IMG/VR virus record: IMGVR_UViG_3300044640_001495
Location: 1-64,000 of that record
Direction: 5' to 3' (one strand)
DNA: 64,000 nucleotides
Shown here: in pieces, positions 3,062 to 62,198 of the stretch
Position numbering within the stretch: the first letter of the stretch is position 1
Layout of the letters: every line of letters begins with the position of its first letter
Position numbers and translations under genes: made by a program
Notes under the pieces: generated by a model
The model's database searches: none
What the model saw: only the letters and a program-made list of their open reading frames with translations
What the model was told of the DNA's origin: nothing

Positions 3062-3502
3062 ATGAAACAATTTCTATTACTGCTGTTGGCAGTACCTGCA
3101 CTAGCATTTGCACAGGGCAAGATGCCCGCAAAGTCAGCGACCTACGATGCACAGGTTATTAGAGTGAGTGATGGCGATACTATTGTAATCGCCGCTCCCT
3201 TTCTCCCACAGCCACTCAAGCCCGAACTTGCTGTTAGGATCTACGGAGTCGACACGCCAGAAAAAGGACACAGAGCTCAATGTCCACAAGAAGACCAACG
3301 AGCGCAATTGGCGAGTAAATTTACAACTCAAGCCTTACAATCCCACCCAAAGCACCAGGTTATTATCTATGGATGGGATAAGTTTGGTGGCCGTATATTG
3401 GGAGACATCTTGGTAAACGGACAAAGCATTAGACAGGGACTTATCAGCAATGGCTTGGCCCGTGAATACTACGGTGAAGCCAAACAAAGCTGGTGTAATT
3501 AA
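3062..3502 (+). CDS. thermonuclease (staphylococcal nuclease-like) with signal peptide
   Basis: RVSDGDTI, RIYGVDTPE and DKFGGRILG motifs; hydrophobic N-terminus; GGAG RBS. Confidence 0.9.
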   Translation: MKQFLLLLLAVPALAFAQGKMPAKSATYDAQVIRVSDGDTIVIAAPFLPQPLKPELAVRIYGVDTPEKGHRAQCPQEDQRAQLASKFTTQALQSHPKHQVIIYGWDKFGGRILGDILVNGQSIRQGLISNGLAREYYGEAKQSWCN

Positions 3503-24703: not shown

Positions 24704-24907
24704 ATGGTAACAGGAAAAGTAAAATGGTTTAACGACGCCAAAGGTTTTGGATTCATTACTCCGGACGATGGTGGCGCAGACTTATTTGCTCACTTTTCAC
24801 AGATTAATTCGAGTGGCTTCAAGAGCCTACAAGAAGGACAAAGTGTAAGGTTTGAAGTGACTCAGGGTCAAAAAGGCGAGCAGGCTAGTAATATTCAAGC
24901 TGCCTAA
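24704..24907 (+). CDS. cspA: cold-shock protein
   Basis: [17 protein letters not shown] (RNP1) and LFAHFS (RNP2). Confidence 0.95.
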
Positions 24908-24910
24908 AAA

Positions 24911-25270
24911 ATTGTTGTAGAAGTCTTAAAGTAAGGCATTCTGGACGCGGGTTCGACTCCCGCCAGGTCCACCATAAAGGAGATTAGTATGGATAACGAA
25001 TATAGTGCTCTAGTTGGCTTTATTGTTGTTATCGTAGTATTTGCTCTAGTCCTTTTATGATGGGCCTGCCATGGTTTCGACAGGGTGAGATAGGATAAAG
25101 ATCAACACGTGGGGTCACGTAAAATACAAAAAACGTAAATGCAAACGCAGATACATTCGACTTCAGCGCAATGAGCTTCACTGGAAACACTGTTTCCGGC
25201 AAAAGCAAAGTTGCTCTAGCTGCCTAAAAAACAGCGGTCCGAGGTAGTTATACCTTGTCATCCAAAATAG
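24911..25270 (+). ncRNA. ssrA: circularly permuted (two-piece) tmRNA
   Basis: Acceptor piece ...GGACGCGGGTTCGACTCCCGCCAGGTCCACCA ends at 24974. The coding piece starts GGGCCTG at 25062 and pairs with CAGGTCC, including G3-U70. Tag ORF 25141-25227 encodes ANADTFDFSAMSFTGNTVSGKSKVALAA*. Outer boundaries are approximate. Confidence 0.9.
24989..25060 (+). CDS. 23-aa hydrophobic peptide encoded in the tmRNA intervening segment
   Basis: AAGGAG RBS directly after CCA; MDNEYSALVGFIVVIVVFALVLL*; stop ends 1 nt before the tmRNA 5' end. Confidence 0.55.
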   Translation: MDNEYSALVGFIVVIVVFALVLL

Positions 25271-27782: not shown

Positions 27783-28202
27783 ATGTTAGAGTGTTTGATT
27801 GTAGGTGATAGTATAGCAGTGGGCACACACATGTTTGCCAAAGAATGTACTCTTGTAGGCAAGGGAGGAATCAATACTTGGCAGTGGAATCGTGATTATC
27901 TAAAAAATGATTTAACCGCCAATACCGTTATTATAAGTTTAGGAAGTAATGATCATAAACATATACATACAGAAGCAGAGTTGTTAAAGATGCGTGACAA
28001 AATAAAAGGCAAACGTGTGTTTTGGATTTTGCCAGCTGGCAATCTTAAAGCAAGTCAAGTTAATATAAACTATATTCAACTAACAATAAAAGAAATTGCT
28101 AACAAATACGGCGATACTGTGTTGCCAATTACCAAATTGCAACCAGACGGCATACATCCAAGTTGGGCTGGATATAAACAACTAGCAGAACAGATAAAAT
28201 AA
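27783..28202 (+). CDS. SGNH/GDSL hydrolase-like protein
   Basis: VGDSIAVG, ISLGSND and DGIHP motifs. Confidence 0.8.
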   Translation: MLECLIVGDSIAVGTHMFAKECTLVGKGGINTWQWNRDYLKNDLTANTVIISLGSNDHKHIHTEAELLKMRDKIKGKRVFWILPAGNLKASQVNINYIQLTIKEIANKYGDTVLPITKLQPDGIHPSWAGYKQLAEQIK

Positions 28203-28651: not shown

Positions 28652-28680
28652 TTGACAACCTCTAAACTAGATGCTATACT
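28652..28680 (+). promoter_or_regulatory. sigma70-type promoter
   Basis: TTGACA-N17-TATACT. Confidence 0.8.
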
Positions 28681-28713: not shown

Positions 28714-29109
28714 TTGACAATGCATCTAGAAGGTCCGTGGCTTAGTACCACTGGCAAACCCAAAGGCAAGCAAAAGTTTGCATCAGCAGAACACGCAAGA
28801 AAGGCCCGTGAATTGAACGAATCGTGGAAAGAACTACAGAAGAAATGGGCTGTAGAGATTGAAGATAAGAAACGAACTCGTGGGCTGGCGGCAGAATCTT
28901 TGAGCAAATCATACTCACTGAAGATTCCTGAGGGCCGCAATACCACTGCACATATCAAAAGTGTGGATACCGGCGGCAATGCTGTGTTAAAAGCCAGTCC
29001 AATCTACACTGGAACCAAAGTCAAAGGCATTGCGACAATGCACAAGAGCAACGCTGTGCCTGTGTTCAGTGATGAAGAAGCACAAGATATCTCCAAAATG
29101 CGTCGATAA
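28714..29109 (+). CDS. conserved T4-like phage hypothetical protein
   Basis: GIATMHKSNAVPVFS..EA.DI..MRR C-terminal motif. Confidence 0.7.
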   Translation: MTMHLEGPWLSTTGKPKGKQKFASAEHARKARELNESWKELQKKWAVEIEDKKRTRGLAAESLSKSYSLKIPEGRNTTAHIKSVDTGGNAVLKASPIYTGTKVKGIATMHKSNAVPVFSDEEAQDISKMRR

Positions 29110-29204
29110 TCACCAGTTTCTCGGGAGATAACGCAAGTATGAGGTATATATTAAACGTTTCGCAAAGAAACTAAGATAGTTGGTTAGATGAAAATGTCAA
29201 AAGC

Positions 29205-29392
29205 ATGGAAGTTTAGCCCGCGGGTCTTGGCCAATGAGAAACCCGTATTTTCGGGATGCCAAGGGTCGCCAAAGGTACTAAGAGTTATGAACTTAGTGGC
29301 TAATGGAGACAACTACACGAAAGTAGGGTTCTTTCAGAGCCTCGTGAAGTTAACTCCCTTTATGTAATGTAATCTGAACTTTGGATTACACC
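29205..29392 (+). promoter_or_regulatory. structured 5' leader, possible ydaO/c-di-AMP-riboswitch-like variant
   Basis: Stems cccg/cggg, gcc..actaag/cttagt..ggc, ctac/gtag and tgtaatc/gattaca; 3' segment GAGCCTCGTGAAGTTAACTCC; lies upstream of a cell wall hydrolase. Confidence 0.4.
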
Positions 29393-29409
29393 AAGTCAAA
29401 GGAGGACTT

Positions 29410-29955
29410 ATGGAAAAATTTATTAGATTTACCACCTATGTTATAGGTTTAATTGTAGTATGCCTATTGGTGCAGAATGTAACTTTTGCCAAAATGGAAA
29501 AGCTACGTGAGGGTCAGATGTTATCATCGCCCGACATTGTGTCAATTAAAACTAGAGAACGACAACTAGAATGCCTAGCGATGAATATCTATCGCGAAGC
29601 AGGACACGAAAACTTTGAAGGCAAAGTAGCAGTGGCACAGGTCACCATGAACAGGGCGTCTCATCCCTCGTTCCCAAAAGATGTCTGTGCAGTTGTTTTT
29701 CAAAAGTCAGTAGTGATAGACAGAGTCATTTGCCAATTCTCATGGTATTGTGACACTGCGCACAAAGCTAGACCTATTAACCAATCGGCTTACAACGAAA
29801 GTATGGCTGTGGCTAAAAAGGTATTATTGGAAGGTTTCAGACTTGACGTAATGAAAGAAGCATTGTATTATCATGCTAACTATGTCAATCCGCAATGGAA
29901 TCTAGAAAAAATTGGAACAATCGGCAATCATATCTTTTACAGAGGAAAGAAATAA
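29410..29955 (+). CDS. sleB: cell wall hydrolase (SleB / Hydrolase_2) with N-terminal membrane anchor
   Basis: CLAMNIYREAG, AVAQVTMNR, CQFSWYC, LYYHANYVNP.W and IGNHIFY. Confidence 0.9.
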   Translation: MEKFIRFTTYVIGLIVVCLLVQNVTFAKMEKLREGQMLSSPDIVSIKTRERQLECLAMNIYREAGHENFEGKVAVAQVTMNRASHPSFPKDVCAVVFQKSVVIDRVICQFSWYCDTAHKARPINQSAYNESMAVAKKVLLEGFRLDVMKEALYYHANYVNPQWNLEKIGTIGNHIFYRGKK

Positions 29956-29956
29956 A

Positions 29957-30292
29957 ATGGTAGACTTCAACAAATTTAATCCGCTGCCTCATTTTGAAAA
30001 TCTTCAAGAGTTCAAAACCTGGGCTACCGCCAAAGTCAGCCACATTTCGGCAGAGACATTTGGTTGGCTAGCAGTCATTGTACTACACGCTGCCACTGTT
30101 CCTAGTCTGTTCGCTGTAATGAGTGGGTTAACTGACAAGATGCCCGCAGTGGATCTTGTGTTGTTATGCTGGGGCGGCCTAACCCTGTTATTTGTCAAAG
30201 CCACAGTGCAAAAAGACATGCTCAACGTAGTCACTATTGGATTTGGATTTATTGTCCAAGCAGTAATGATGGCGCTAATCTTCTTCAAATAA
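29957..30292 (+). CDS. small multi-pass membrane protein
   Basis: Three hydrophobic helices; start moved to MVDFNKF. Confidence 0.65.
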   Translation: MVDFNKFNPLPHFENLQEFKTWATAKVSHISAETFGWLAVIVLHAATVPSLFAVMSGLTDKMPAVDLVLLCWGGLTLLFVKATVQKDMLNVVTIGFGFIVQAVMMALIFFK

Positions 30293-30309: not shown

Positions 30310-30338
30310 TTGACATTGAGCAGCCGTGGTGCTATACT
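30310..30338 (+). promoter_or_regulatory. sigma70-type promoter
   Basis: TTGACA-N17-TATACT. Confidence 0.8.
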
Positions 30339-30372: not shown

Positions 30373-30852
30373 ATGAAAAAGGCAATTCTAGTAGGCTTAC
30401 TTGCAACAGCTATTACAGGCTGTTCGTCAATGAAAGATATTCCAGAGCGCAAGACATTTGCTCAACCTGGTTGGTATCAAAGTTGCGCACAGGAAGGCGT
30501 TAAAGGTTGGTTCTGGTGGAGTGAAGATTATGTCTATGCCTGCGGTGCAGGAGACAGTAATTACGCTCAGGCAGCAGAAGAACAAATGGATGCGATTGCA
30601 ATGAACAACTTTGCAAAACGTATCAATGGTACAGTTAATAGCGAAACATCTATTGACATTGTCAACGACAAGAAAACAACTCGTACCAAGATTACCTACA
30701 AGGTAGAAGACACCGCCATCCGCCGTCATGTGAAAAGTGAACGCGGACACTTTACTATGGCCGGAAAACATTATACTTTTGTTCGTCTTGAGATGAAGAA
30801 GGCTACATTCGATCAATTGATCGCTGAAGCTCAGACCAAGCGAGCTCAATAA
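30373..30852 (+). CDS. lipoprotein (LPP20-like)
   Basis: MKKAILVGLLATAITG-C lipobox. Confidence 0.7.
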   Translation: MKKAILVGLLATAITGCSSMKDIPERKTFAQPGWYQSCAQEGVKGWFWWSEDYVYACGAGDSNYAQAAEEQMDAIAMNNFAKRINGTVNSETSIDIVNDKKTTRTKITYKVEDTAIRRHVKSERGHFTMAGKHYTFVRLEMKKATFDQLIAEAQTKRAQ

Positions 30853-58124: not shown

Positions 58125-58213
58125 GGACGAGTGCGCTGAATTGGTTGAAGGCAACGGACTGTAAATCCGCCACATAAGAAACATTGTAGGTTCGACTCCT
58201 ACCTCGTCCACCA
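58125..58213 (+). tRNA. tRNA-Tyr(GTA)
   Basis: Acceptor ggacgag/ctcgtcc, loop CT-GTA-AA, long variable arm, CCA. Confidence 0.9.
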
Positions 58214-58222
58214 AACGAATGG

Positions 58223-58251
58223 TTGACTTTTTTTTGGATTGGTGTTATACT
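58223..58251 (+). promoter_or_regulatory. sigma70-type promoter
   Basis: TTGACT-N17-TATACT. Confidence 0.75.
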
Positions 58252-58281
58252 ATTAATACTGTGAACTTAAAAGGAAATCAA

Positions 58282-58476
58282 ATGCAATCGTATCGTGTTT
58301 ATGTTGAAGTGGGTTCGTATGCAGGTGAAGGTACCAGCGGTGCTTTTCAAACTGAGAGCCTTCGACAATTTGAAACTGTAGTAAATGCCCAGACATCCGG
58401 AGATGCTGTGCGTATAGCAGAAGCCCAATATGGTGGCCAAGAACGGTGCCGTGTCACGTTCCGCGGCGTTGCTTAA
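58282..58476 (+). CDS. small hypothetical protein within the tRNA array
   Basis: AAGGA RBS; own promoter; 64 aa. Confidence 0.6.
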   Translation: MQSYRVYVEVGSYAGEGTSGAFQTESLRQFETVVNAQTSGDAVRIAEAQYGGQERCRVTFRGVA

Positions 58477-58484
58477 CAATTTTA

Positions 58485-58559
58485 GGTCTGTTCGTATAGA
58501 GGTTATTACTGCGGATTGTCTATCCGCTTACGGGGGTTCGATTCCCCCACAGACCGCCA
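58485..58559 (+). tRNA. tRNA-Asp(GTC)
   Basis: gcgga-TT GTC TA-tccgc; T-loop TTCGATT; CCA. Confidence 0.92.
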
Positions 58560-58566
58560 AGTTTAT

Positions 58567-58643
58567 TCCTCGGTAGCACAGTTGGTAGTTGCGCGGCACT
58601 GTTAATGCCGATGTCGGAAGTTCGAGCCTTCCCCGGGGAGCCA
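58567..58643 (+). tRNA. tRNA-Asn(GTT)
   Basis: cggca-CT GTT AA-tgccg; CCA. Confidence 0.92.
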
Positions 58644-58648
58644 ATAAT

Positions 58649-58724
58649 GTATCCTTAGCTCAATTGGCAGAGCGCTGGTCTCCAAAACCAGAGGTTCGCG
58701 GTTCGAGGCCGTGAGGGTACGCCA
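58649..58724 (+). tRNA. tRNA-Trp(CCA)
   Basis: ctggt-CT CCA AA-accag; CCA. Confidence 0.92.
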
Positions 58725-58732
58725 AGTTTTAT

Positions 58733-58807
58733 GGACCGTTCGTCTATCGGTTAGGACACTAGGTTTTCATCCTGGTAAGAGGGGTTCGACTCCCCTACGG
58801 TCTTCCA
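58733..58807 (+). tRNA. tRNA-Glu(TTC)
   Basis: ctagg-TT TTC AT-cctgg; CCA. Confidence 0.92.
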
Positions 58808-58814
58808 AATTTAT

Positions 58815-58892
58815 GTGGCGGTGGCAGAGAGGCCCATTGCAACGGATTGCAAATCCGTAAAATCGTGAGTTCAAATCTCACCCGCCACTCCA
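58815..58892 (+). tRNA. tRNA-Cys(GCA)
   Basis: acgga-TT GCA AA-tccgt; U73; CCA. Confidence 0.9.
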
Positions 58893-58942
58893 AACATGGC
58901 TCCACTCGTTCGACATAGTCGATGCTGTGGAGTTTTTCTTTT

Positions 58943-59023
58943 GCCCCGGTAGACAAATTGGCAAAGTCGTCTCTCTCAAAAAGAGAAATTTAAATGCGGG
59001 TTCAACTCCCGCCCGGGGTACCA
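58943..59023 (+). tRNA. tRNA-Leu(CAA)
   Basis: tctct-CT CAA AA-agaga; small variable arm; CCA. Confidence 0.88.
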
Positions 59024-59028
59024 ATCAT

Positions 59029-59118
59029 GGAAGTATGGCTGAGCATGGCTTAAGGCAGCAGTCTTGAAAACTGAAGGCTCGAAAGGGTCCGTGGGTTCGA
59101 ATCCTACTACTTCCGCCA
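59029..59118 (+). tRNA. tRNA-Ser(TGA)
   Basis: cagt-CT TGA AA-actg; long variable arm; G73; CCA. Confidence 0.9.
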
Positions 59119-59240
59119 ACTATGGACGAATCATTTGAGCAGTGTTAGATGCACACGGGTTACCTTTCCTAACCGCCAAGTGGCGTACCCCTGCCGAATG
59201 ACCTGGGCGTGGCAGTGATAATGATTCGTCCGCCTAATAC

Positions 59241-59315
59241 AGCCTATTAGCTCAGTGGTAGAGCACCGTCTTGATAAGGCGGGGGTCCTTGGATCGTTCC
59301 CAAGATAGGCTACCA
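59241..59315 (+). tRNA. tRNA-Ile(GAT) with non-canonical T-loop ATCGTTC
   Basis: ccgtc-TT GAT AA-ggcgg; acceptor agcctat/ataggct; CCA. Confidence 0.88.
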
Positions 59316-59337
59316 ATTTTTTAAAAGGAGATCTGTC

Positions 59338-59382
59338 ATGACTAGTGACAAGAGTGATAAGATAACGGGGGTGAAACTTTAA
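59338..59382 (+). CDS. 14-aa mini-ORF overlapping the 5' end of tRNA-Lys
   Basis: AAGGAG RBS; MTSDKSDKITGVKL*. Confidence 0.35.
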   Translation: MTSDKSDKITGVKL

Positions 59383-59440
59383 GGTGAAGTAACTGGCTTT
59401 TAACCAGTAAAACTCGGATCGTTCCCGAGCACCCCTACCA
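59367..59440 (+). tRNA. tRNA-Lys(TTT) with non-canonical T-loop ATCGTTC
   Basis: actgg-CT TTT AA-ccagt; CCA. Confidence 0.85.
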
Positions 59441-59521
59441 TATAAAAACACATTAGGCCTGGTCATAGACCATCGCGGGTATAGTGCCTTCCGTGCCGCG
59501 GACTTGAGTGTGTTTTTATAT

Positions 59522-59597
59522 GGTAATATAGCATAGTGGCTAATGCAGTTGCTTCATACGCAGCCTATCGTTGGTTCGAGTCCAACTATTACCACCA
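59522..59597 (+). tRNA. tRNA with CAT anticodon (elongator Met or lysidine-Ile2)
   Basis: gttgc-TT CAT AC-gcagc; paired G1-C72, so not initiator-like; CCA. Confidence 0.88.
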
Positions 59598-59603
59598 AGT
59601 TGT

Positions 59604-59677
59604 TGGGGGTTAGTTAAATGGTATAACCGCGGATTTTGATTCCGCTATTAAAGGTTCGATTCCTTTACCCTCTGCCA
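59604..59677 (+). tRNA. tRNA-Gln(TTG)
   Basis: gcgga-TT TTG AT-tccgc; U1-U72 mismatch; CCA. Confidence 0.88.
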
Positions 59678-59685
59678 AAAAATAA

Positions 59686-59760
59686 CGGTCCTTAGTTCAA
59701 TGGATAGAATGCTTGGCTTCGAACCAAGCGGTGTGGGTTCGATTCCTGCAGGACCGGCCA
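59686..59760 (+). tRNA. tRNA-Arg(TCG)
   Basis: cttgg-CT TCG AA-ccaag; CCA. Confidence 0.9.
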
Positions 59761-59761
59761 A

Positions 59762-60436
59762 CTAGATAATAGTAGATAGTTCAGCAGGAGTTAACTTAGG
59801 TGGCTCTGGAAAAGGACGTGGATCAGAAAACCCAACTGTTGTTGGTCCGTTGTTTACCGTTTCTCTTACTCGAGAGTCATTGGGTTGGCCAACAGATAGA
59901 AACACAATGGGCCATTCATTTTCTGCAAGACCTAAAATCTTGTGAGCTTGGTCTTCGAAAAAGCATGATGTAAAGGCAGTACGATATCCTAGAGATTCTG
60001 CTTGTATCATAGAAAAACTAGCAGCAATCATTGTATCTTTTTCAGAACGTGTTCGAACAGTATATTGTGTTTTAGGATCAGCAGATCTAGAAGATACATT
60101 TATTCCTTGTTCACGTACTGTAGTACCATTAGAAACAAGACCTAGGTCAAAGTTGTCTAAGATAGGAACTCCTATCCATGCTAACAGTAAAGGTGATTGG
60201 GCTGTTAGTAAATGTTTACGAATTGGCATGTTAATGAAACTGTCTAAGAACAGTTTATTTTTTAATTCAAGAGCTTTGTGGCTTTGAGTTAATGCAATAA
60301 CACGCCAAGGATATGCACGTTGCTTACTAGGGGCTGAACAACCAGCTGTTAGTATTGAGTCAATATGCTCTTGAGGTATAGCGTCATTAGTAAATGCTCG
60401 CTGTGTTCGTCGATTTAAAAAGATGTCTAACATCAA
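59762..60436 (-). CDS. nitroreductase-family flavoprotein inserted antisense in the tRNA array
   Basis: NRRTQRAF, I..IL.AG..APS...AYPW, MIQAESLGYRTAF and FLSVG. Confidence 0.8.
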   Translation of the reverse strand: MMLDIFLNRRTQRAFTNDAIPQEHIDSILTAGCSAPSKQRAYPWRVIALTQSHKALELKNKLFLDSFINMPIRKHLLTAQSPLLLAWIGVPILDNFDLGLVSNGTTVREQGINVSSRSADPKTQYTVRTRSEKDTMIAASFSMIQAESLGYRTAFTSCFFEDQAHKILGLAENEWPIVFLSVGQPNDSRVRETVNNGPTTVGFSDPRPFPEPPKLTPAELSTII

Positions 60437-60447
60437 GTATTTATTTT

Positions 60448-60521
60448 ATCGCTGTAGTGAAAAGATATCACAAGACCCTGCGAAGGTCTAAGTCCACGTT
60501 CAACTCGTGGCAGCGATACCA
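60448..60521 (+). tRNA. tRNA-Arg(GCG)
   Basis: agacc-CT GCG AA-ggtct; acceptor atcgctg/cagcgat; D-loop lacks GG; CCA. Confidence 0.82.
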
Positions 60522-60591
60522 AAATTAGTAAAATTCTATTACGTAAGATCCAAGCAAAGTGCAAGGATTGGCCATAACAAGGAGATATAAA

Positions 60592-60798
60592 ATGAAACCT
60601 ATTACTTTTAAAAATCGTTTAAACAACGAACGAGTAGTCTGTGAAGATTCTCGTCAAACTCAGAATATAGATGGCGTTGAGTATCTCTTGGTTCATCGCC
60701 CTGACAATCAACGACAGTTCCTTATGCGTAAGGATGTGTTAGAAAAAGTTAATGGTGTTGGTAGTGTAGTGGCTGCACGGCTGTCTGTGAAACAGTAA
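60592..60798 (+). CDS. small hypothetical protein whose C-terminus is read through tRNA-His
   Basis: AAGGAG RBS; MKPITFKNRLNNERVVCED...; stop lies inside the tRNA. Confidence 0.6.
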   Translation: MKPITFKNRLNNERVVCEDSRQTQNIDGVEYLLVHRPDNQRQFLMRKDVLEKVNGVGSVVAARLSVKQ

Positions 60799-60827
60799 GA
60801 GAGAGTTCGATTCTCCCCTTCACCCCA
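60754..60827 (+). tRNA. tRNA-His(GTG), atypical (two U-U pairs in acceptor stem)
   Basis: gctgt-CT GTG AA-acagt; G-1/C73; CCA. Confidence 0.72.
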
Positions 60828-60829
60828 AT

Positions 60830-60905
60830 GCCGCTTTAGCTGATGTGGTCATAGCACCGGTTTGAAGAACCGAGGAACTAGGTTCGATCCCTAGAGGCGG
60901 CACCA
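60830..60905 (+). tRNA. tRNA-Phe(GAA)
   Basis: cggt-TT GAA GA-accg; CCA. Confidence 0.88.
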
Positions 60906-60911
60906 AGATAT

Positions 60912-60995
60912 GTGAGCGTGGTGGAATGGTATACACAGCAGACTTAAAATCTGCCGCCTTCGGGATTGAGGGTTCAAGTCCCTCCGCTCATACCA
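60912..60995 (+). tRNA. tRNA-Leu(TAA)
   Basis: gcaga-CT TAA AA-tctgc; variable arm; CCA. Confidence 0.92.
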
Positions 60996-61002
60996 AATAA
61001 AT

Positions 61003-61094
61003 GCCAGCGAGACTTGGTAGTCAGAGAGGTTTTATAAACCTTTTAGCGCCAGATTAGCGTTCTTGAGAGGGTTCGATTCCCTCCGCTGGTACCA
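61003..61094 (+). tRNA. tRNA-Ile(TAT) with long variable arm
   Basis: gaggt-TT TAT AA-acctt; variable arm agcgc-cagatta-gcgtt; acceptor gccagcg/cgctggt; A73; CCA. Confidence 0.8.
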
Positions 61095-61124
61095 AATTAT
61101 TTTATAAGTTTTTTCATAAAGTTG

Positions 61125-61153
61125 TTGACACACAGGTGATTAGACTATATAAT
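61125..61153 (+). promoter_or_regulatory. sigma70-type promoter inside the tRNA array
   Basis: TTGACA-N17-TATAAT. Confidence 0.85.
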
Positions 61154-61175
61154 GTATATTATTAGTTAGAAATTT

Positions 61176-61259
61176 GCGCAAGTGGTGGAATGGTATACAC
61201 GCTGGTCTTAGAAGCCAGTGCCGAAAGGATTGAGAGTTCGAGTCTCTCCTTGCGCACCA
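61176..61259 (+). tRNA. tRNA-Leu(TAG)
   Basis: ctggt-CT TAG AA-gccag; variable arm; CCA. Confidence 0.92.
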
Positions 61260-61266
61260 TAGTTTA

Positions 61267-61342
61267 GGGTTCTTAGCTCAGTTGGTAGAGCGTCTGCCTT
61301 ACACGCAGAATGTCGTCAGTTCGACCCTGGCAGAACCCACCA
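61267..61342 (+). tRNA. tRNA-Val(TAC)
   Basis: tctgc-CT TAC AC-gcaga; CCA. Confidence 0.93.
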
Positions 61343-61350
61343 AGCAACAC

Positions 61351-61438
61351 GGAGCATTGGCCGACCGGTTAAGGCAACAGATTGCTAATCTGTCATTCAG
61401 TAATGGGTGAGTAGGTTCGATTCCTACATGCTCCGCCA
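61351..61438 (+). tRNA. tRNA-Ser(GCT)
   Basis: acaga-TT GCT AA-tctgt; long variable arm; CCA. Confidence 0.92.
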
Positions 61439-61441
61439 TAA

Positions 61442-61641
61442 CGTTCCGAGTGTCTTCGGATAGTGTGACCCACACGATGAGAAGTAGTGTGACAACTACG
61501 GGTGGTAGTCTTTAAACCCAAAGGCCGCTAGCAATGCGAGAACGGTCCCTGTCGGGAAGCGGGTGGAAGGTACGAGTGAGGGGTATGATAGCGTCATATC
61601 TTTCTGTACTATAATTACCGCCGGGGGATGCAGAGCAACCA
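61442..61641 (+). ncRNA. candidate ~200-nt structured RNA of unknown family in the tRNA array
   Basis: At least seven short stems, GC-richer than flanks, no ORF of 60 aa or more, ends in ACCA. Confidence 0.55.
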
Positions 61642-61662
61642 GATTTTAATAAAGGAAATACA

Positions 61663-61875
61663 ATGAAACCAGGTCCAAATTATAGAATGAGTGCTTTGAC
61701 TAAAGCAAGTCTAGCAATGAGTAGAGTTCTAGATCCGCACAAACGAGGTGAATGGAAACGTGCTATGATTGATGCTGAACTATGTGCTGCCGTGGTGCCA
61801 AAACGTGAACCACGCAAACAGGGAGGTGGTAATTTTACCACTCATGCATCCGGAACAGTATCCAGTGGAGGCTAA
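61663..61875 (+). CDS. small basic hypothetical protein
   Basis: AAGGA RBS; 70 aa. Confidence 0.6.
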   Translation: MKPGPNYRMSALTKASLAMSRVLDPHKRGEWKRAMIDAELCAAVVPKREPRKQGGGNFTTHASGTVSSGG

Positions 61876-61876
61876 C

Positions 61877-62026
61877 ATGCAAGTTCGAGTTAAAGAAAAT
61901 GCAGATCAGGTTGGTAAGTGTGGTTGCGGTCGTTCGCCTACTGGTAAGTGCATCGGTTGGCACGGACTAACCGAACAAGCATTTAAAGAAAAACTTCAAG
62001 AGTATAAACTCAACGAAGGTAAGTAA
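61877..62026 (+). CDS. CDGSH-like Fe-S / zinc-finger small protein
   Basis: GGAGG RBS; CGCGRSPTGKCIGWHG. Confidence 0.65.
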   Translation: MQVRVKENADQVGKCGCGRSPTGKCIGWHGLTEQAFKEKLQEYKLNEGK

Positions 62027-62032
62027 AATATT

Positions 62033-62107
62033 GGGCTGTTGGTATAGATGGGAACACAGTAGCTTTGCAAGCTTCAATCCCCGGTTCGATCCCGGGACGG
62101 TCCACCA
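62033..62107 (+). tRNA. tRNA-Ala(TGC)
   Basis: G3-U70 in gggctgt/acggtcc; TT TGC AA loop; CCA. Confidence 0.88.
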
Positions 62108-62124
62108 AGTTTTAAGTAAGTATT

Positions 62125-62198
62125 GCCCCTTTAGTATAATGGTATTACACCTGTTTTGTAATCAGGTTACGGCAGTTCGATTCTGTCAAGGGGCACCA
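62125..62198 (+). tRNA. tRNA-Thr(TGT)
   Basis: cctg(t)-TT TGT AA-(t)cagg; CCA. Confidence 0.9.

What the first reader, a model, noticed from the sequence alone, without database searches (positions are those of the whole stretch)
29205..29400. Long structured leader before the SleB cell-wall hydrolase with ydaO/c-di-AMP-riboswitch-like elements
Seen: about 300 nt of non-coding sequence with several stems. GAGAAACCCG-UAUUUU-CGGGAUG and the 3' GAGCCUCGUGAAGUUAACUCC loosely parallel the ydaO GGGGACCC..UUU..GGGGUG and GAGCCCGUCAGCUAACCUC segments as I recall them. A tgtaatc/gattaca hairpin lies just before the RBS. Established: c-di-AMP riboswitches commonly control cell-wall hydrolases. Inference: a variant riboswitch, possibly with a different ligand, timing a phage lysis or wall enzyme.
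Basis: partly seen in the sequence, partly recalled or inferred. Interest (0 to 1): 0.6.

Follow-up and report, generated by a model that had tools for sequence, protein, structure and literature searches.

The report
Conserved RNA leader before phage lysis enzyme
The 300 bases in front of this giant freshwater phage's cell-wall-cutting enzyme encode a large folded RNA that is better conserved than the enzyme gene, matches no catalogued RNA family (it is not a c-di-AMP riboswitch), and probably controls when the lysis enzyme is made.

Summary
No Rfam 15 family, including c-di-AMP and c-di-GMP-I, matches the window or nine diverse relatives.

The element is a ~255-nt 5' leader (29157-29409) behind a conserved TATATA box. 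It has six helices (P1-P6):
- P2, P4, P5 and P6 covary.
- P3 keeps pairing through changes on one strand only.
- P1 carries a GNRA-type loop.

I found 116 distinct full-length versions in freshwater phage and metagenome contigs. There is one copy per genome. None was found in 151 Burkholderiales genomes.

The leader is more conserved (82.6% nt) than the gene behind it (70.5% nt). It lies directly before exported murein hydrolases of two unrelated families: SleB-like Hydrolase_2 and RlpA-like DPBB_1. In the window that gene opens a lysis cassette.

The strand CUCCCUUU can pair with an internal copy of the Shine-Dalgarno (SD) half-site (CAAAGG plus GGAG). It can also pair with the real CAAAGGAGG. 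The two states differ by about 1.6 kcal/mol in the model.

My best reading is a new, riboswitch-like translational switch that times lysis. The trigger is unknown, and the switch itself is inferred, not shown.

The parts
29145..29150 (+). TATATA box, a promoter-like -10 element. The transcription start is inferred at about 29154-29157.
   Evidence: Conserved at a fixed distance (5-7 nt) before P1 in most relatives. The hexamer is depleted genome-wide, 106 per strand against about 225 expected, and it recurs shortly before gene and tRNA starts. The start site was not mapped.
29157..29171 (+). P1 hairpin GUUUC-GCAAA-GAAAC with a GNRA-type loop.
   Evidence: The stem is 97-100% paired in 116 sequences. 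The loop is GCAAA in most relatives and GCAA, GAAA, GUAA or GAGA in others. It is recovered by the unconstrained MFE.
29172..29181 (+). J1/2, a nearly invariant single strand (U)AAGAUAGU(U).
   Evidence: AGAU is invariant in 85 sequences. No partner could be established.
29182..29218 (+). P2, a variable hairpin.
   Evidence: The five basal pairs are 89-100% paired, with up to 5 standard pair types per position. With the partner slid by one base, pairing falls to 14-59% at positions 1-4; the basal pair stays at 84-87%.
29220..29269 (+). P3 domain. Outer and inner helix 29220-31/29258-69. Conserved 10-nt internal loop CAAUGAGAAA at 29232-41. Capping hairpin P3a at 29242-45/29252-55.
   Evidence: The 5' strand is nearly invariant. 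The 3' strand occurs in more than 7 forms that all keep pairing. 20 (later 38) distinct variants each fold alone into the same shape. Only one-sided changes were seen, no double compensations.
29270..29275 (+). J3/4 CAAAGG, an internal copy of the SD's 5' half (the proposed SD mimic and 5' strand of helix Px).
   Evidence: It is the same hexamer as 29397-29402. A29271-U29361 becomes U-A in 6 DPBB-clade sequences. Px is weak or broken in the AAUGG and some AAAAG variants. Px remains inconclusive.
29273..29301 (+). P4, a variable hairpin.
   Evidence: Positions 5-8 of the stem are 87-95% paired, each with 4 standard pair types. The slid control gives 13-50% from stem position 2 inward; the two basal pairs stay high when slid +1 (93-95%).
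29305..29357 (+). P5, a long irregular hairpin. P5a: GGAG 29305-08 with CUCC 29354-57. P5b: 29311-14/29348-51. P5c: 29316-20/29342-46. P5d: 29327-31/29337-41.
   Evidence: 46 distinct variants fold alone to the same shape. In the covariance-model alignment of 100 relatives, P5b, P5c and P5d hold 7 pairs with double changes. P5a never varies.
29354..29361 (+). CUCCCUUU, the proposed anti-SD strand.
   Evidence: Nearly invariant. It is complementary both to GGAG 29305-08 plus AAAG 29271-74 and to AAAGGAG 29398-29404.
29362..29396 (+). Helix 8 (A29362-U29396, U29363-R29395), a 4x4 internal loop and the variable hairpin P6 (29368-74/29384-90).
   Evidence: P6 has 6 of 8 pairs with double changes. 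Helix 8 shows AU, GU and GC at one pair and UG, UA and AU at the other, at 99% pairing.
29398..29412 (+). Shine-Dalgarno AAAGGAGG (29398-29405) and the start codon (29410-29412) of the hydrolase.
   Evidence: Read from the sequence. GGAG is invariant in relatives.
29410..29955 (+). SleB-like murein hydrolase, 181 aa, with an N-terminal membrane or signal segment (about aa 9-27).
   Evidence: Pfam Hydrolase_2 PF07486, E 2.6e-25. PHROG endolysin families. Hydrophobic segment.
29957..30292 (+). Holin-like ORF, 111 aa, with three hydrophobic segments. It starts 2 nt after the hydrolase stop.
   Evidence: Hydropathy scan. No family match. The role is inferred.
28714..29109 (+). Upstream 131-aa basic protein of unknown function (phrog_27048). 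It usually, but not always, precedes the leader.
   Evidence: PHROG match. Adjacent in most SleB-type relatives. Absent or not detected in the divergent and DPBB clades.

Best explanation
The region is the structured 5' untranslated leader of the phage's exported murein hydrolase, which is the first gene of the lysis cassette. It belongs to an RNA family that Rfam does not hold.

Transcription probably starts just behind a TATATA box. The RNA folds into six helices (P1-P6) held together by nearly invariant junctions.

It most likely acts in cis on translation initiation. The strand CUCCCUUU (29354-61) can pair in two ways:
- Inside the folded core, with GGAG (29305-08) and the SD-like CAAAGG (29270-75). 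This forms a three-way junction with P4 and P5 and leaves the real Shine-Dalgarno free (ON).
- With the real CAAAGGAGG (29397-29405). This forms a long hairpin around P6 that hides the ribosome binding site (OFF).

Some signal would decide between the two states and so set the time of lysis. It could be a small molecule bound by the conserved core (a riboswitch) or a phage or host factor.

Shown: conservation, the helices, the gene association and the absence of a known family. Inferred: the transcription start, the switch and the trigger.
For: No known family:
- Rfam 15 gives nothing at gathering scores or at E<=10 on the locus.
- It gives nothing on 9 diverse relatives.
- Direct scans with RF00379 and RF01051 find nothing at the locus.

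Conservation:
- 116 distinct full-length versions in freshwater phage and metagenome contigs.
- In 55 relatives whose hydrolase is under 75% identical, the leader is 82.6% identical in nucleotides against 70.5% for the coding sequence.

Structure:
- z = -3.3.
- The unconstrained MFE reproduces the comparative helices.
- P2, P4 and P6 covary strongly.
- For the 3' half, 95.3% of cells are paired against 86.5% in shuffles. 17 pairs show double changes. The covariation score is 0.29, against 0.13 shuffled and 0.02-0.06 slid.
- P3 and P5 variants all fold alike.

Not coding.

Cis role:
- The leader sits 8-16 nt before the start of the hydrolase ORF in essentially all complete cases.
- It precedes two unrelated exported murein hydrolase families, Hydrolase_2 and DPBB_1.
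- In the DPBB clade the upstream neighbours differ.
- There is one copy per genome.

Switch:
- The two CAAAGG hexamers are identical.
- Hand-built states score -61.9 (SD free) and -60.3 kcal/mol (SD paired).
- The MFE picks an SD-occluding hybrid and the centroid picks the SD-free form.
- RNAalifold on the 3' half picks SD pairing.
- There is an A-U to U-A exchange at 29271/29361.
- Helix 8, next to the SD helix, is supported.
Against: - The nucleotides that would make the switch (GGAG, CUCC, AAAG, CUUU) almost never vary, so covariation cannot confirm either state.
- Px is weakened in the AAUGG variants and some AAAAG variants.
- The single compensatory exchange comes from one clade.
- Any GGAG/CUCC helix near an SD gives some anti-SD potential by chance.
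- No ligand, no transcription start and no expression data are available. Metatranscriptome contigs show presence only.
- 72 of the 80 closest SleB-encoding viral loci do without the leader. It is therefore a lineage-specific addition, not a requirement of such enzymes.
Confidence: 0.55

Rival explanations
1. It is a divergent ydaO-type c-di-AMP riboswitch, or a c-di-GMP one.
For: c-di-AMP riboswitches are known to precede cell-wall hydrolase genes (established knowledge).
Against: - There is no hit to RF00379 or RF01051 at the locus even at E<=10, nor in 9 relatives.
- The fold is a row of six helices with a three-way junction candidate, not the pseudo-twofold-symmetric ydaO fold.
- The phage encodes no diadenylate cyclase and no GGDEF domain.
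- The tmRNA type and the nearest named relative (a Delftia phage) point to a Gram-negative host. c-di-AMP signalling is uncommon in such hosts (general knowledge).
Confidence: 0.03
2. It is a protein-operated leader. A phage late protein or a host factor binds the conserved core and represses or activates translation, as T4 RegA or gp32 do on their targets. No small molecule is involved.
For: - Phages commonly use translational repressors (review PMC3014915).
- Every structural and gene-association result above fits this reading as well.
- The basic 131-aa protein encoded just upstream in most relatives would be an obvious candidate.
Against: - The upstream 131-aa gene is missing or not adjacent in the divergent and DPBB clades that still keep the leader.
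- About 250 nt with many invariant junction nucleotides and a GNRA loop is more elaborate than typical protein operators.
Confidence: 0.2
3. It is a constitutive structured leader that does not switch. It would protect the lysis mRNA from 5' decay, or set a fixed low or delayed translation rate through its folding.
For: - A hairpin sits at the very 5' end (P1).
- The overall fold is very stable.
- No variation proves alternative states.
Against: - Stability elements rarely need about 80 invariant unpaired nucleotides.
- They rarely stay more conserved than the coding sequence.
- The duplicated CAAAGG and the near-isoenergetic alternatives would be unexplained.
Confidence: 0.15
4. It is an independent RNA gene, either a trans-acting small RNA or a self-cleaving ribozyme, that merely lies before the hydrolase gene.
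For: - It has its own promoter-like box.
- In one metatranscriptome the contig depth is higher over 29240-29347 than over the flanks (run X4).
Against: - There is no terminator between the element and the ORF.
- The conserved block runs without a break into the SD and the start codon.
- The position relative to the ORF start is fixed across two gene families.
- No ribozyme family matches.
- The depth over conserved sequence sums many relatives, so it cannot rank expression.
Confidence: 0.07

Closest known systems
ydaO-yuaA / c-di-AMP riboswitch (Rfam RF00379)
   Same: A long structured leader placed before cell-wall hydrolase genes. It presumably couples wall remodelling to a signal.
   Different: There is no covariance-model match and the helix layout differs. 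This element is found only in freshwater phage and metagenome contigs, and its expression platform acts on translation. No ligand is known.
Translational ON riboswitches built on a three-way junction, such as the Vibrio vulnificus add adenine riboswitch (from my own knowledge)
   Same: The proposed logic is the same. A strand complementary to the SD is captured inside the folded sensor, which frees the ribosome binding site. Otherwise that strand pairs with the SD.
   Different: This RNA is about three times larger and unrelated in sequence. It uses a split internal SD mimic (CAAAGG ... GGAG) flanking helix P4. Ligand binding is untested.
Translational silencing of the phage T4 lysozyme gene e by an mRNA hairpin (McPheeters 1986, as summarised in PMC3014915)
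   Same: A phage keeps its wall-degrading enzyme from being made too early by hiding the SD or the start codon in RNA structure.
   Different: In T4 a single hairpin forms only in long early transcripts, and late promoters start inside it. Here the promoter-like box lies upstream of the whole 255-nt structure, so every transcript carries it. The structure is also far more complex and more conserved.
Uncharacterised candidate structured RNAs of viruses (10,006 csRNAs from IMG/VR; PMC10690425)
   Same: The data source and the kind of object are the same: a conserved structured intergenic RNA of phages.
   Different: That paper's text mentions no motif tied to hydrolase, endolysin or lysis genes, and its tables are not held here. 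I therefore could not tell whether this motif is in the list.

Membership tests
c-di-AMP riboswitch (ydaO, RF00379) | Match to the family covariance model at or near its gathering score (38 bits). | tested here: not met
   No match in the window at gathering scores. None at E<=10 in 29000-29520. None in the whole 353-kb genome. The same search rang in the control genomes.
c-di-AMP riboswitch (ydaO, RF00379) | Pseudo-twofold symmetric fold with two ligand pockets. | tested here: not met
   The comparative structure is P1-P6 in a row, with one candidate three-way junction. No internal symmetry or repeated core motif was seen.
c-di-AMP riboswitch (ydaO, RF00379) | Binding of c-di-AMP. | not testable with these tools
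   This needs in-line probing or ITC.
c-di-GMP-I riboswitch (RF01051) | Match to the family covariance model. | tested here: not met
   The only two weak hits (12.5 and 10.5 bits, cut-off 35) lie elsewhere in the genome, at 3106-3187 and 90220-90329. There is nothing at the locus.
Any Rfam 15 family | Covariance-model match at E<=5-10. | tested here: not met
   Only noise hits (miRNA, snoRNA and sRNA models at 12-14 bits) in the window region. One noise hit in 9 relatives.
Riboswitch (generic definition) | Conserved, covarying structured domain in a 5' leader. | tested here: met
Riboswitch (generic definition) | Association with functionally related genes across non-homologous gene families. 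| tested here: met
   The leader precedes Hydrolase_2 proteins and DPBB_1 lytic transglycosylases, both with export signals.
Riboswitch (generic definition) | Expression platform with mutually exclusive pairings. | tested here: inconclusive
   Alternative pairings of 29354-61 with the mimic or with the SD exist and are near-isoenergetic. The bases involved are invariant, and only one clade shows a compensatory exchange.
Riboswitch (generic definition) | Direct, specific ligand binding that changes gene expression. | not testable with these tools
   No ligand can be inferred from sequence. The phage encodes no DAC or GGDEF enzyme.
SleB/CwlJ-type cell wall hydrolase (Pfam Hydrolase_2), the downstream gene | Match to PF07486 above the curated cut-off. 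| tested here: met
   89.4 bits against a cut-off of 27, covering profile positions 2-100 of 100.

The most novel reading that the evidence does not exclude
The leader is a new riboswitch class. It is carried only by giant freshwater phages and senses a metabolite or second messenger of the infected cell. It then switches on translation of an exported murein hydrolase. Lysis timing would thus be set directly by an RNA sensor rather than only by a holin clock.
Probability: 0.3. Interest if true: 0.85.

Novelty: new variant of a known kind. Interest (0 to 1): 0.62.

Why it matters
Phage lysis timing is classically explained by holins and antiholins. Here the enzymes carry their own export signals, so their synthesis may itself be the trigger. 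A 255-nt RNA that is better conserved than the enzyme guards that synthesis.

If the RNA senses a signal, it would be:
- a rare phage-borne riboswitch class;
- a handle on what giant phages monitor before they lyse;
- a new large RNA fold for structural study.

Even if it is protein-operated, it marks a conserved control point of lysis in an abundant, uncultured group of freshwater jumbo phages.

Tried and rejected
- **BLAST against named phages.** Near-identity search found nothing. The distant search hit only the end of the upstream ORF in Delftia phage PhiW-14 and BUCT-ZZ01, and neither has the leader.
- **RNAalifold on full-length or 5'-half MAFFT alignments.** It gave wrong long-range pairs, because the P3 3' strand shifts register between clades. 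P3 was therefore judged from per-variant folds, which lean towards the structure.
- **Rejected pairings.**
  - The local CUAC/GUAG hairpin inside P5, because GUAG is not conserved.
  - A hairpin around the SD, 29391-97/29405-13, which is broken by the GUC/GUG/AUG variants.
  - Pairing between the P4 loop and UGUAAU, because the P4 loop is absent in several clades.
  - Pairing between J1/2 and the start region, which is lost in the DPBB clade.
  - The RNAalifold CCA/UGG helix. It never covaries, and the U29271 variants break it.
- **AUG-UAA 'start-stop' at 29362-67.** It is not conserved.
- **Coding potential of the 59-aa ORF.** Rejected.
- **T4 gene-e-like promoter-inside-hairpin model.** The promoter-like box lies upstream of the whole structure.
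- **Scan of prokaryote genomes with a loosened pattern.** It returned only chance matches among the first 120. The covariance model found nothing in 151 Burkholderiales genomes. The motif was not found in those searched, which is not proof of absence.
- **Metatranscriptome contigs.** They cover the leader and both flanks in relatives. They cannot show a start, an end or a level.
- **Fifth shift control.** It crashed with a division by zero. Only shifts 0, +1 and -1 are used.

Full report
**Setting**

The window is the first 64 kb of a 353-kb virus record, estimated 98% complete. It carries a permuted tmRNA and 23 tRNA genes. Its only named distant relatives are Delftia phage PhiW-14 and a phage filed under Synechococcus. 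It is therefore a jumbo phage, probably of a Gram-negative freshwater host.

The finding lies in the 300-nt gap between two ORFs:
- a 131-aa ORF (28714-29109, phrog_27048, function unknown);
- a 181-aa ORF (29410-29955) that matches Pfam Hydrolase_2, the SleB/CwlJ type, at 89 bits, and also PHROG endolysin families.

The hydrolase has an N-terminal hydrophobic segment. Two nucleotides after its stop comes a 111-aa ORF with three hydrophobic segments, which looks like a holin. Two lipoprotein-like ORFs follow. The gap therefore precedes a lysis cassette. The roles of the downstream ORFs are inferred from hydropathy only.

**Observation**

The leader from 29155 to 29412 folds to -75.6 kcal/mol, with z = -3.3, and none of 200 shuffles folds as well. 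The opposite strand gives z = -2.2. The 59-aa ORF inside the gap is not conserved.

**Not a known family**

- Rfam 15 gives no match at gathering scores in the window apart from the tmRNA and tRNAs.
- At E<=10 on 29000-29520 there are only three noise hits of 12-14 bits.
- Direct scans of the whole genome with the c-di-AMP and c-di-GMP-I models find nothing at the locus.
- Nine diverse relatives are also blank.
- The phage encodes no diadenylate cyclase and no GGDEF domain.

The ydaO reading fails its membership test.

**Distribution and conservation**

Searches with the two flanking proteins and with conserved DNA patterns found the same leader in many IMG/VR contigs and JGI/ENA metagenome contigs.
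- A profile HMM of the leader finds 101 distinct sequences in the first set of loci and 42 further loci in the metagenome set.
- This gives 116 distinct full-length versions.
- The source contigs reach 280-384 kb.
- There is one copy in the window's own genome, by HMM and by covariance model.
- Words of the stretch occur in metatranscriptomes from 23 studies, most of them freshwater or lake. Laid contigs cover the leader and both flanks in relatives. This shows presence in RNA libraries but no more.
- The 3'-half model found nothing in 151 sampled Burkholderiales genomes.
- A loosened pattern found only chance matches among the first 120 prokaryote hits.

In the 55 relatives whose hydrolase is under 75% identical in protein, the leader averages 82.6% nucleotide identity. 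The coding sequence averages 70.5%.

**Structure**

Comparative analysis gives six helices. The unconstrained MFE of the window sequence reproduces all of them.

| Helix | Window coordinates | Evidence |
|---|---|---|
| P1 | 29157-71 | Invariant 5-bp stem. The loop is GCAAA in most relatives and GCAA, GAAA, GUAA or GAGA in others, so it is GNRA-type. |
| P2 | 29182-29218 | Variable hairpin. Basal pairs are about 87-100% paired with 3-6 pair types. Mostly 13-59% when the partner is slid by one base; the basal pairs stay high. |
| P3 | 29220-69 | The 5' strand is almost invariant. The 3' strand has more than seven forms that all keep pairing, with one-sided changes only. It encloses a conserved 10-nt internal loop, CAAUGAGAAA, and the capping hairpin P3a. 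|
| P4 | 29273-29301 | Variable hairpin, with evidence like that for P2. |
| P5 | 29305-57 | A four-segment hairpin. 46 variants fold to the same shape. |
| P6 | 29368-90 | Variable hairpin, with evidence like that for P2. |

A covariance model of the 3' half aligned 100 relatives. On that alignment:
- 95.3% of cells are paired, against 86.5% in shuffles;
- 17 of 31 pairs show changes on both sides;
- the covariation score is 0.29, against 0.13 shuffled and 0.02-0.06 for slid partners.

That alignment was fitted to the model's structure, which favours it. The slid controls and the independent anchored counts point the same way.

The junctions are nearly invariant: AAGAUAGU, CAAUGAGAAA, CAAAGG, AAUGGAGAC and CUCCCUUWAUGUAAUGU.

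**Gene association**

In all complete cases but a few, the leader ends 8-16 nt before a Hydrolase_2 ORF that is 40-100% identical to the window's.

In a divergent clade it instead precedes proteins of about 155-168 aa. These have a cleavable-looking signal peptide and a DPBB_1 (RlpA-type lytic transglycosylase) domain. In that clade the upstream neighbours are different and, in L306, on the other strand.

Two unrelated exported murein hydrolases behind the same leader argue that the RNA belongs functionally to the enzyme gene.

Conversely, only 8 of the 80 closest SleB-encoding viral loci carry it. It is a lineage-specific control device.

**Mechanism (inferred)**

The hexamer CAAAGG occurs twice: at 29270-75, just 5' of P4, and at 29397-29402 as the 5' half of the SD. 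GGAG occurs at 29305-08, just 3' of P4, and again in the SD. The nearly invariant strand CUCCCUUU (29354-61) can therefore pair in two ways.
- **SD free.** It pairs with the split internal mimic. CUCC pairs with GGAG to close P5. CUUU pairs with AAAG to form a short helix Px, which makes a three-way junction with P4.
- **SD hidden.** It pairs with the real SD, extending the P6 hairpin.

With all other helices kept, the two states score -61.9 and -60.3 kcal/mol. The MFE of 29155-29412 is a hybrid in which CCUUUAU pairs with the SD's AAAGG. The centroid is the SD-free form. RNAalifold on the 3' half chooses SD pairing.

Natural variation helps little, because these bases are invariant.
- Position 29271/29361 is A-U in 38 sequences, A/A in 72 and U-A in 6, the last all from the DPBB clade.
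- Helix 8 next to the SD helix (29362-63/29395-96) keeps pairing through G-U, G-C, U-A and A-U variants. It is compatible with both states.
- Px is weak in the AAUGG and some AAAAG variants.

I therefore rate the switch as plausible, not shown.

The rationale is biological. Enzymes with their own export signal reach the wall without a holin, so premature synthesis would be lethal to the infection. T4 solves the same problem for lysozyme with a simpler SD-hiding hairpin (PMC3014915).

**Promoter**

A TATATA box sits 5-7 nt before P1 in most relatives. The hexamer is depleted genome-wide and recurs before genes and tRNAs. There is no terminator between the upstream ORF and the leader. That ORF has a near-consensus sigma-70-type promoter. 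Read-through early transcripts would therefore also carry the whole leader. The transcription start is inferred, not mapped.

**Rivals**

- A protein-operated leader fits all the structural data. The adjacent 131-aa basic protein is a candidate, but it is not kept in the clades that keep the leader.
- A static stability or attenuating leader is possible. It does not explain the invariant junctions or the duplicated SD half-site.
- A separate small RNA or ribozyme is unlikely. Conservation runs into the SD and the start codon, the spacing to the ORF is fixed, and no terminator or ribozyme family is found.

**Novelty**

The kind of object is known: a structured cis-regulatory leader, possibly a riboswitch. 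The family is not in Rfam 15. I found no paper describing an RNA motif before phage SleB-like or RlpA-like genes. It may be an unnamed entry among the 10,006 candidate structured RNAs mined from IMG/VR. That paper's text does not mention hydrolase or lysis genes, and its tables are not held here.

**Limits**

- No experiment is included.
- The P3 evidence rests on per-sequence folding.
- The alignments are enriched by pattern searches that require parts of the motif.
- Related sequences are not independent events.
- The host is unknown.

Noticed in passing
window 24880-25227: A phage-encoded tmRNA. It matches both the permuted (two-piece) tmRNA model at 120 bits and the betaproteobacterial tmRNA model at 102 bits. 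This hints at a betaproteobacterial host.
   Followed up: no
window 58125-62195: An array of 23 tRNA genes on the + strand.
   Followed up: no
window 28652-28680 and 30310-30338: Two identical near-consensus sigma-70-type promoters, TTGACA-17 nt-TATACT with TG (11 of 12 matches). One lies before the 131-aa ORF. The other lies before a lipoprotein-like ORF starting at 30373.
   Followed up: partly
whole genome; for example window 20749 and 61146: The hexamer TATATA is depleted genome-wide: 106 per strand against about 225 expected. Copies often lie 20-35 nt before gene or tRNA starts. This suggests a phage-specific promoter box.
   Followed up: partly
L274:10712-10940 and L184 (oriented 2141-2368): Two broken versions of the leader. 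In L274 the leader is cut after P5 and joined to SleB residue 53, so P6, the SD and the signal segment are lost. In L184 the leader ends after P5 and no hydrolase follows.
   Followed up: partly
L175:43-300 (- strand) and L285:332-586 (- strand): The most divergent leader precedes an 85-aa ORF with a signal-peptide-like N-terminus and no Pfam family. This is a possible third kind of downstream gene.
   Followed up: partly
window 27783-28202: A short ORF (139 aa) with a GDSL-like lipase/acylhydrolase match, upstream of the lysis region.
   Followed up: no
window 29362-29367: An AUG directly followed by UAA (a 'start-stop') lies inside the invariant AUGUAAUG segment. There is no SD before it, and several clades have changed it. 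It is probably structural rather than translated.
   Followed up: partly
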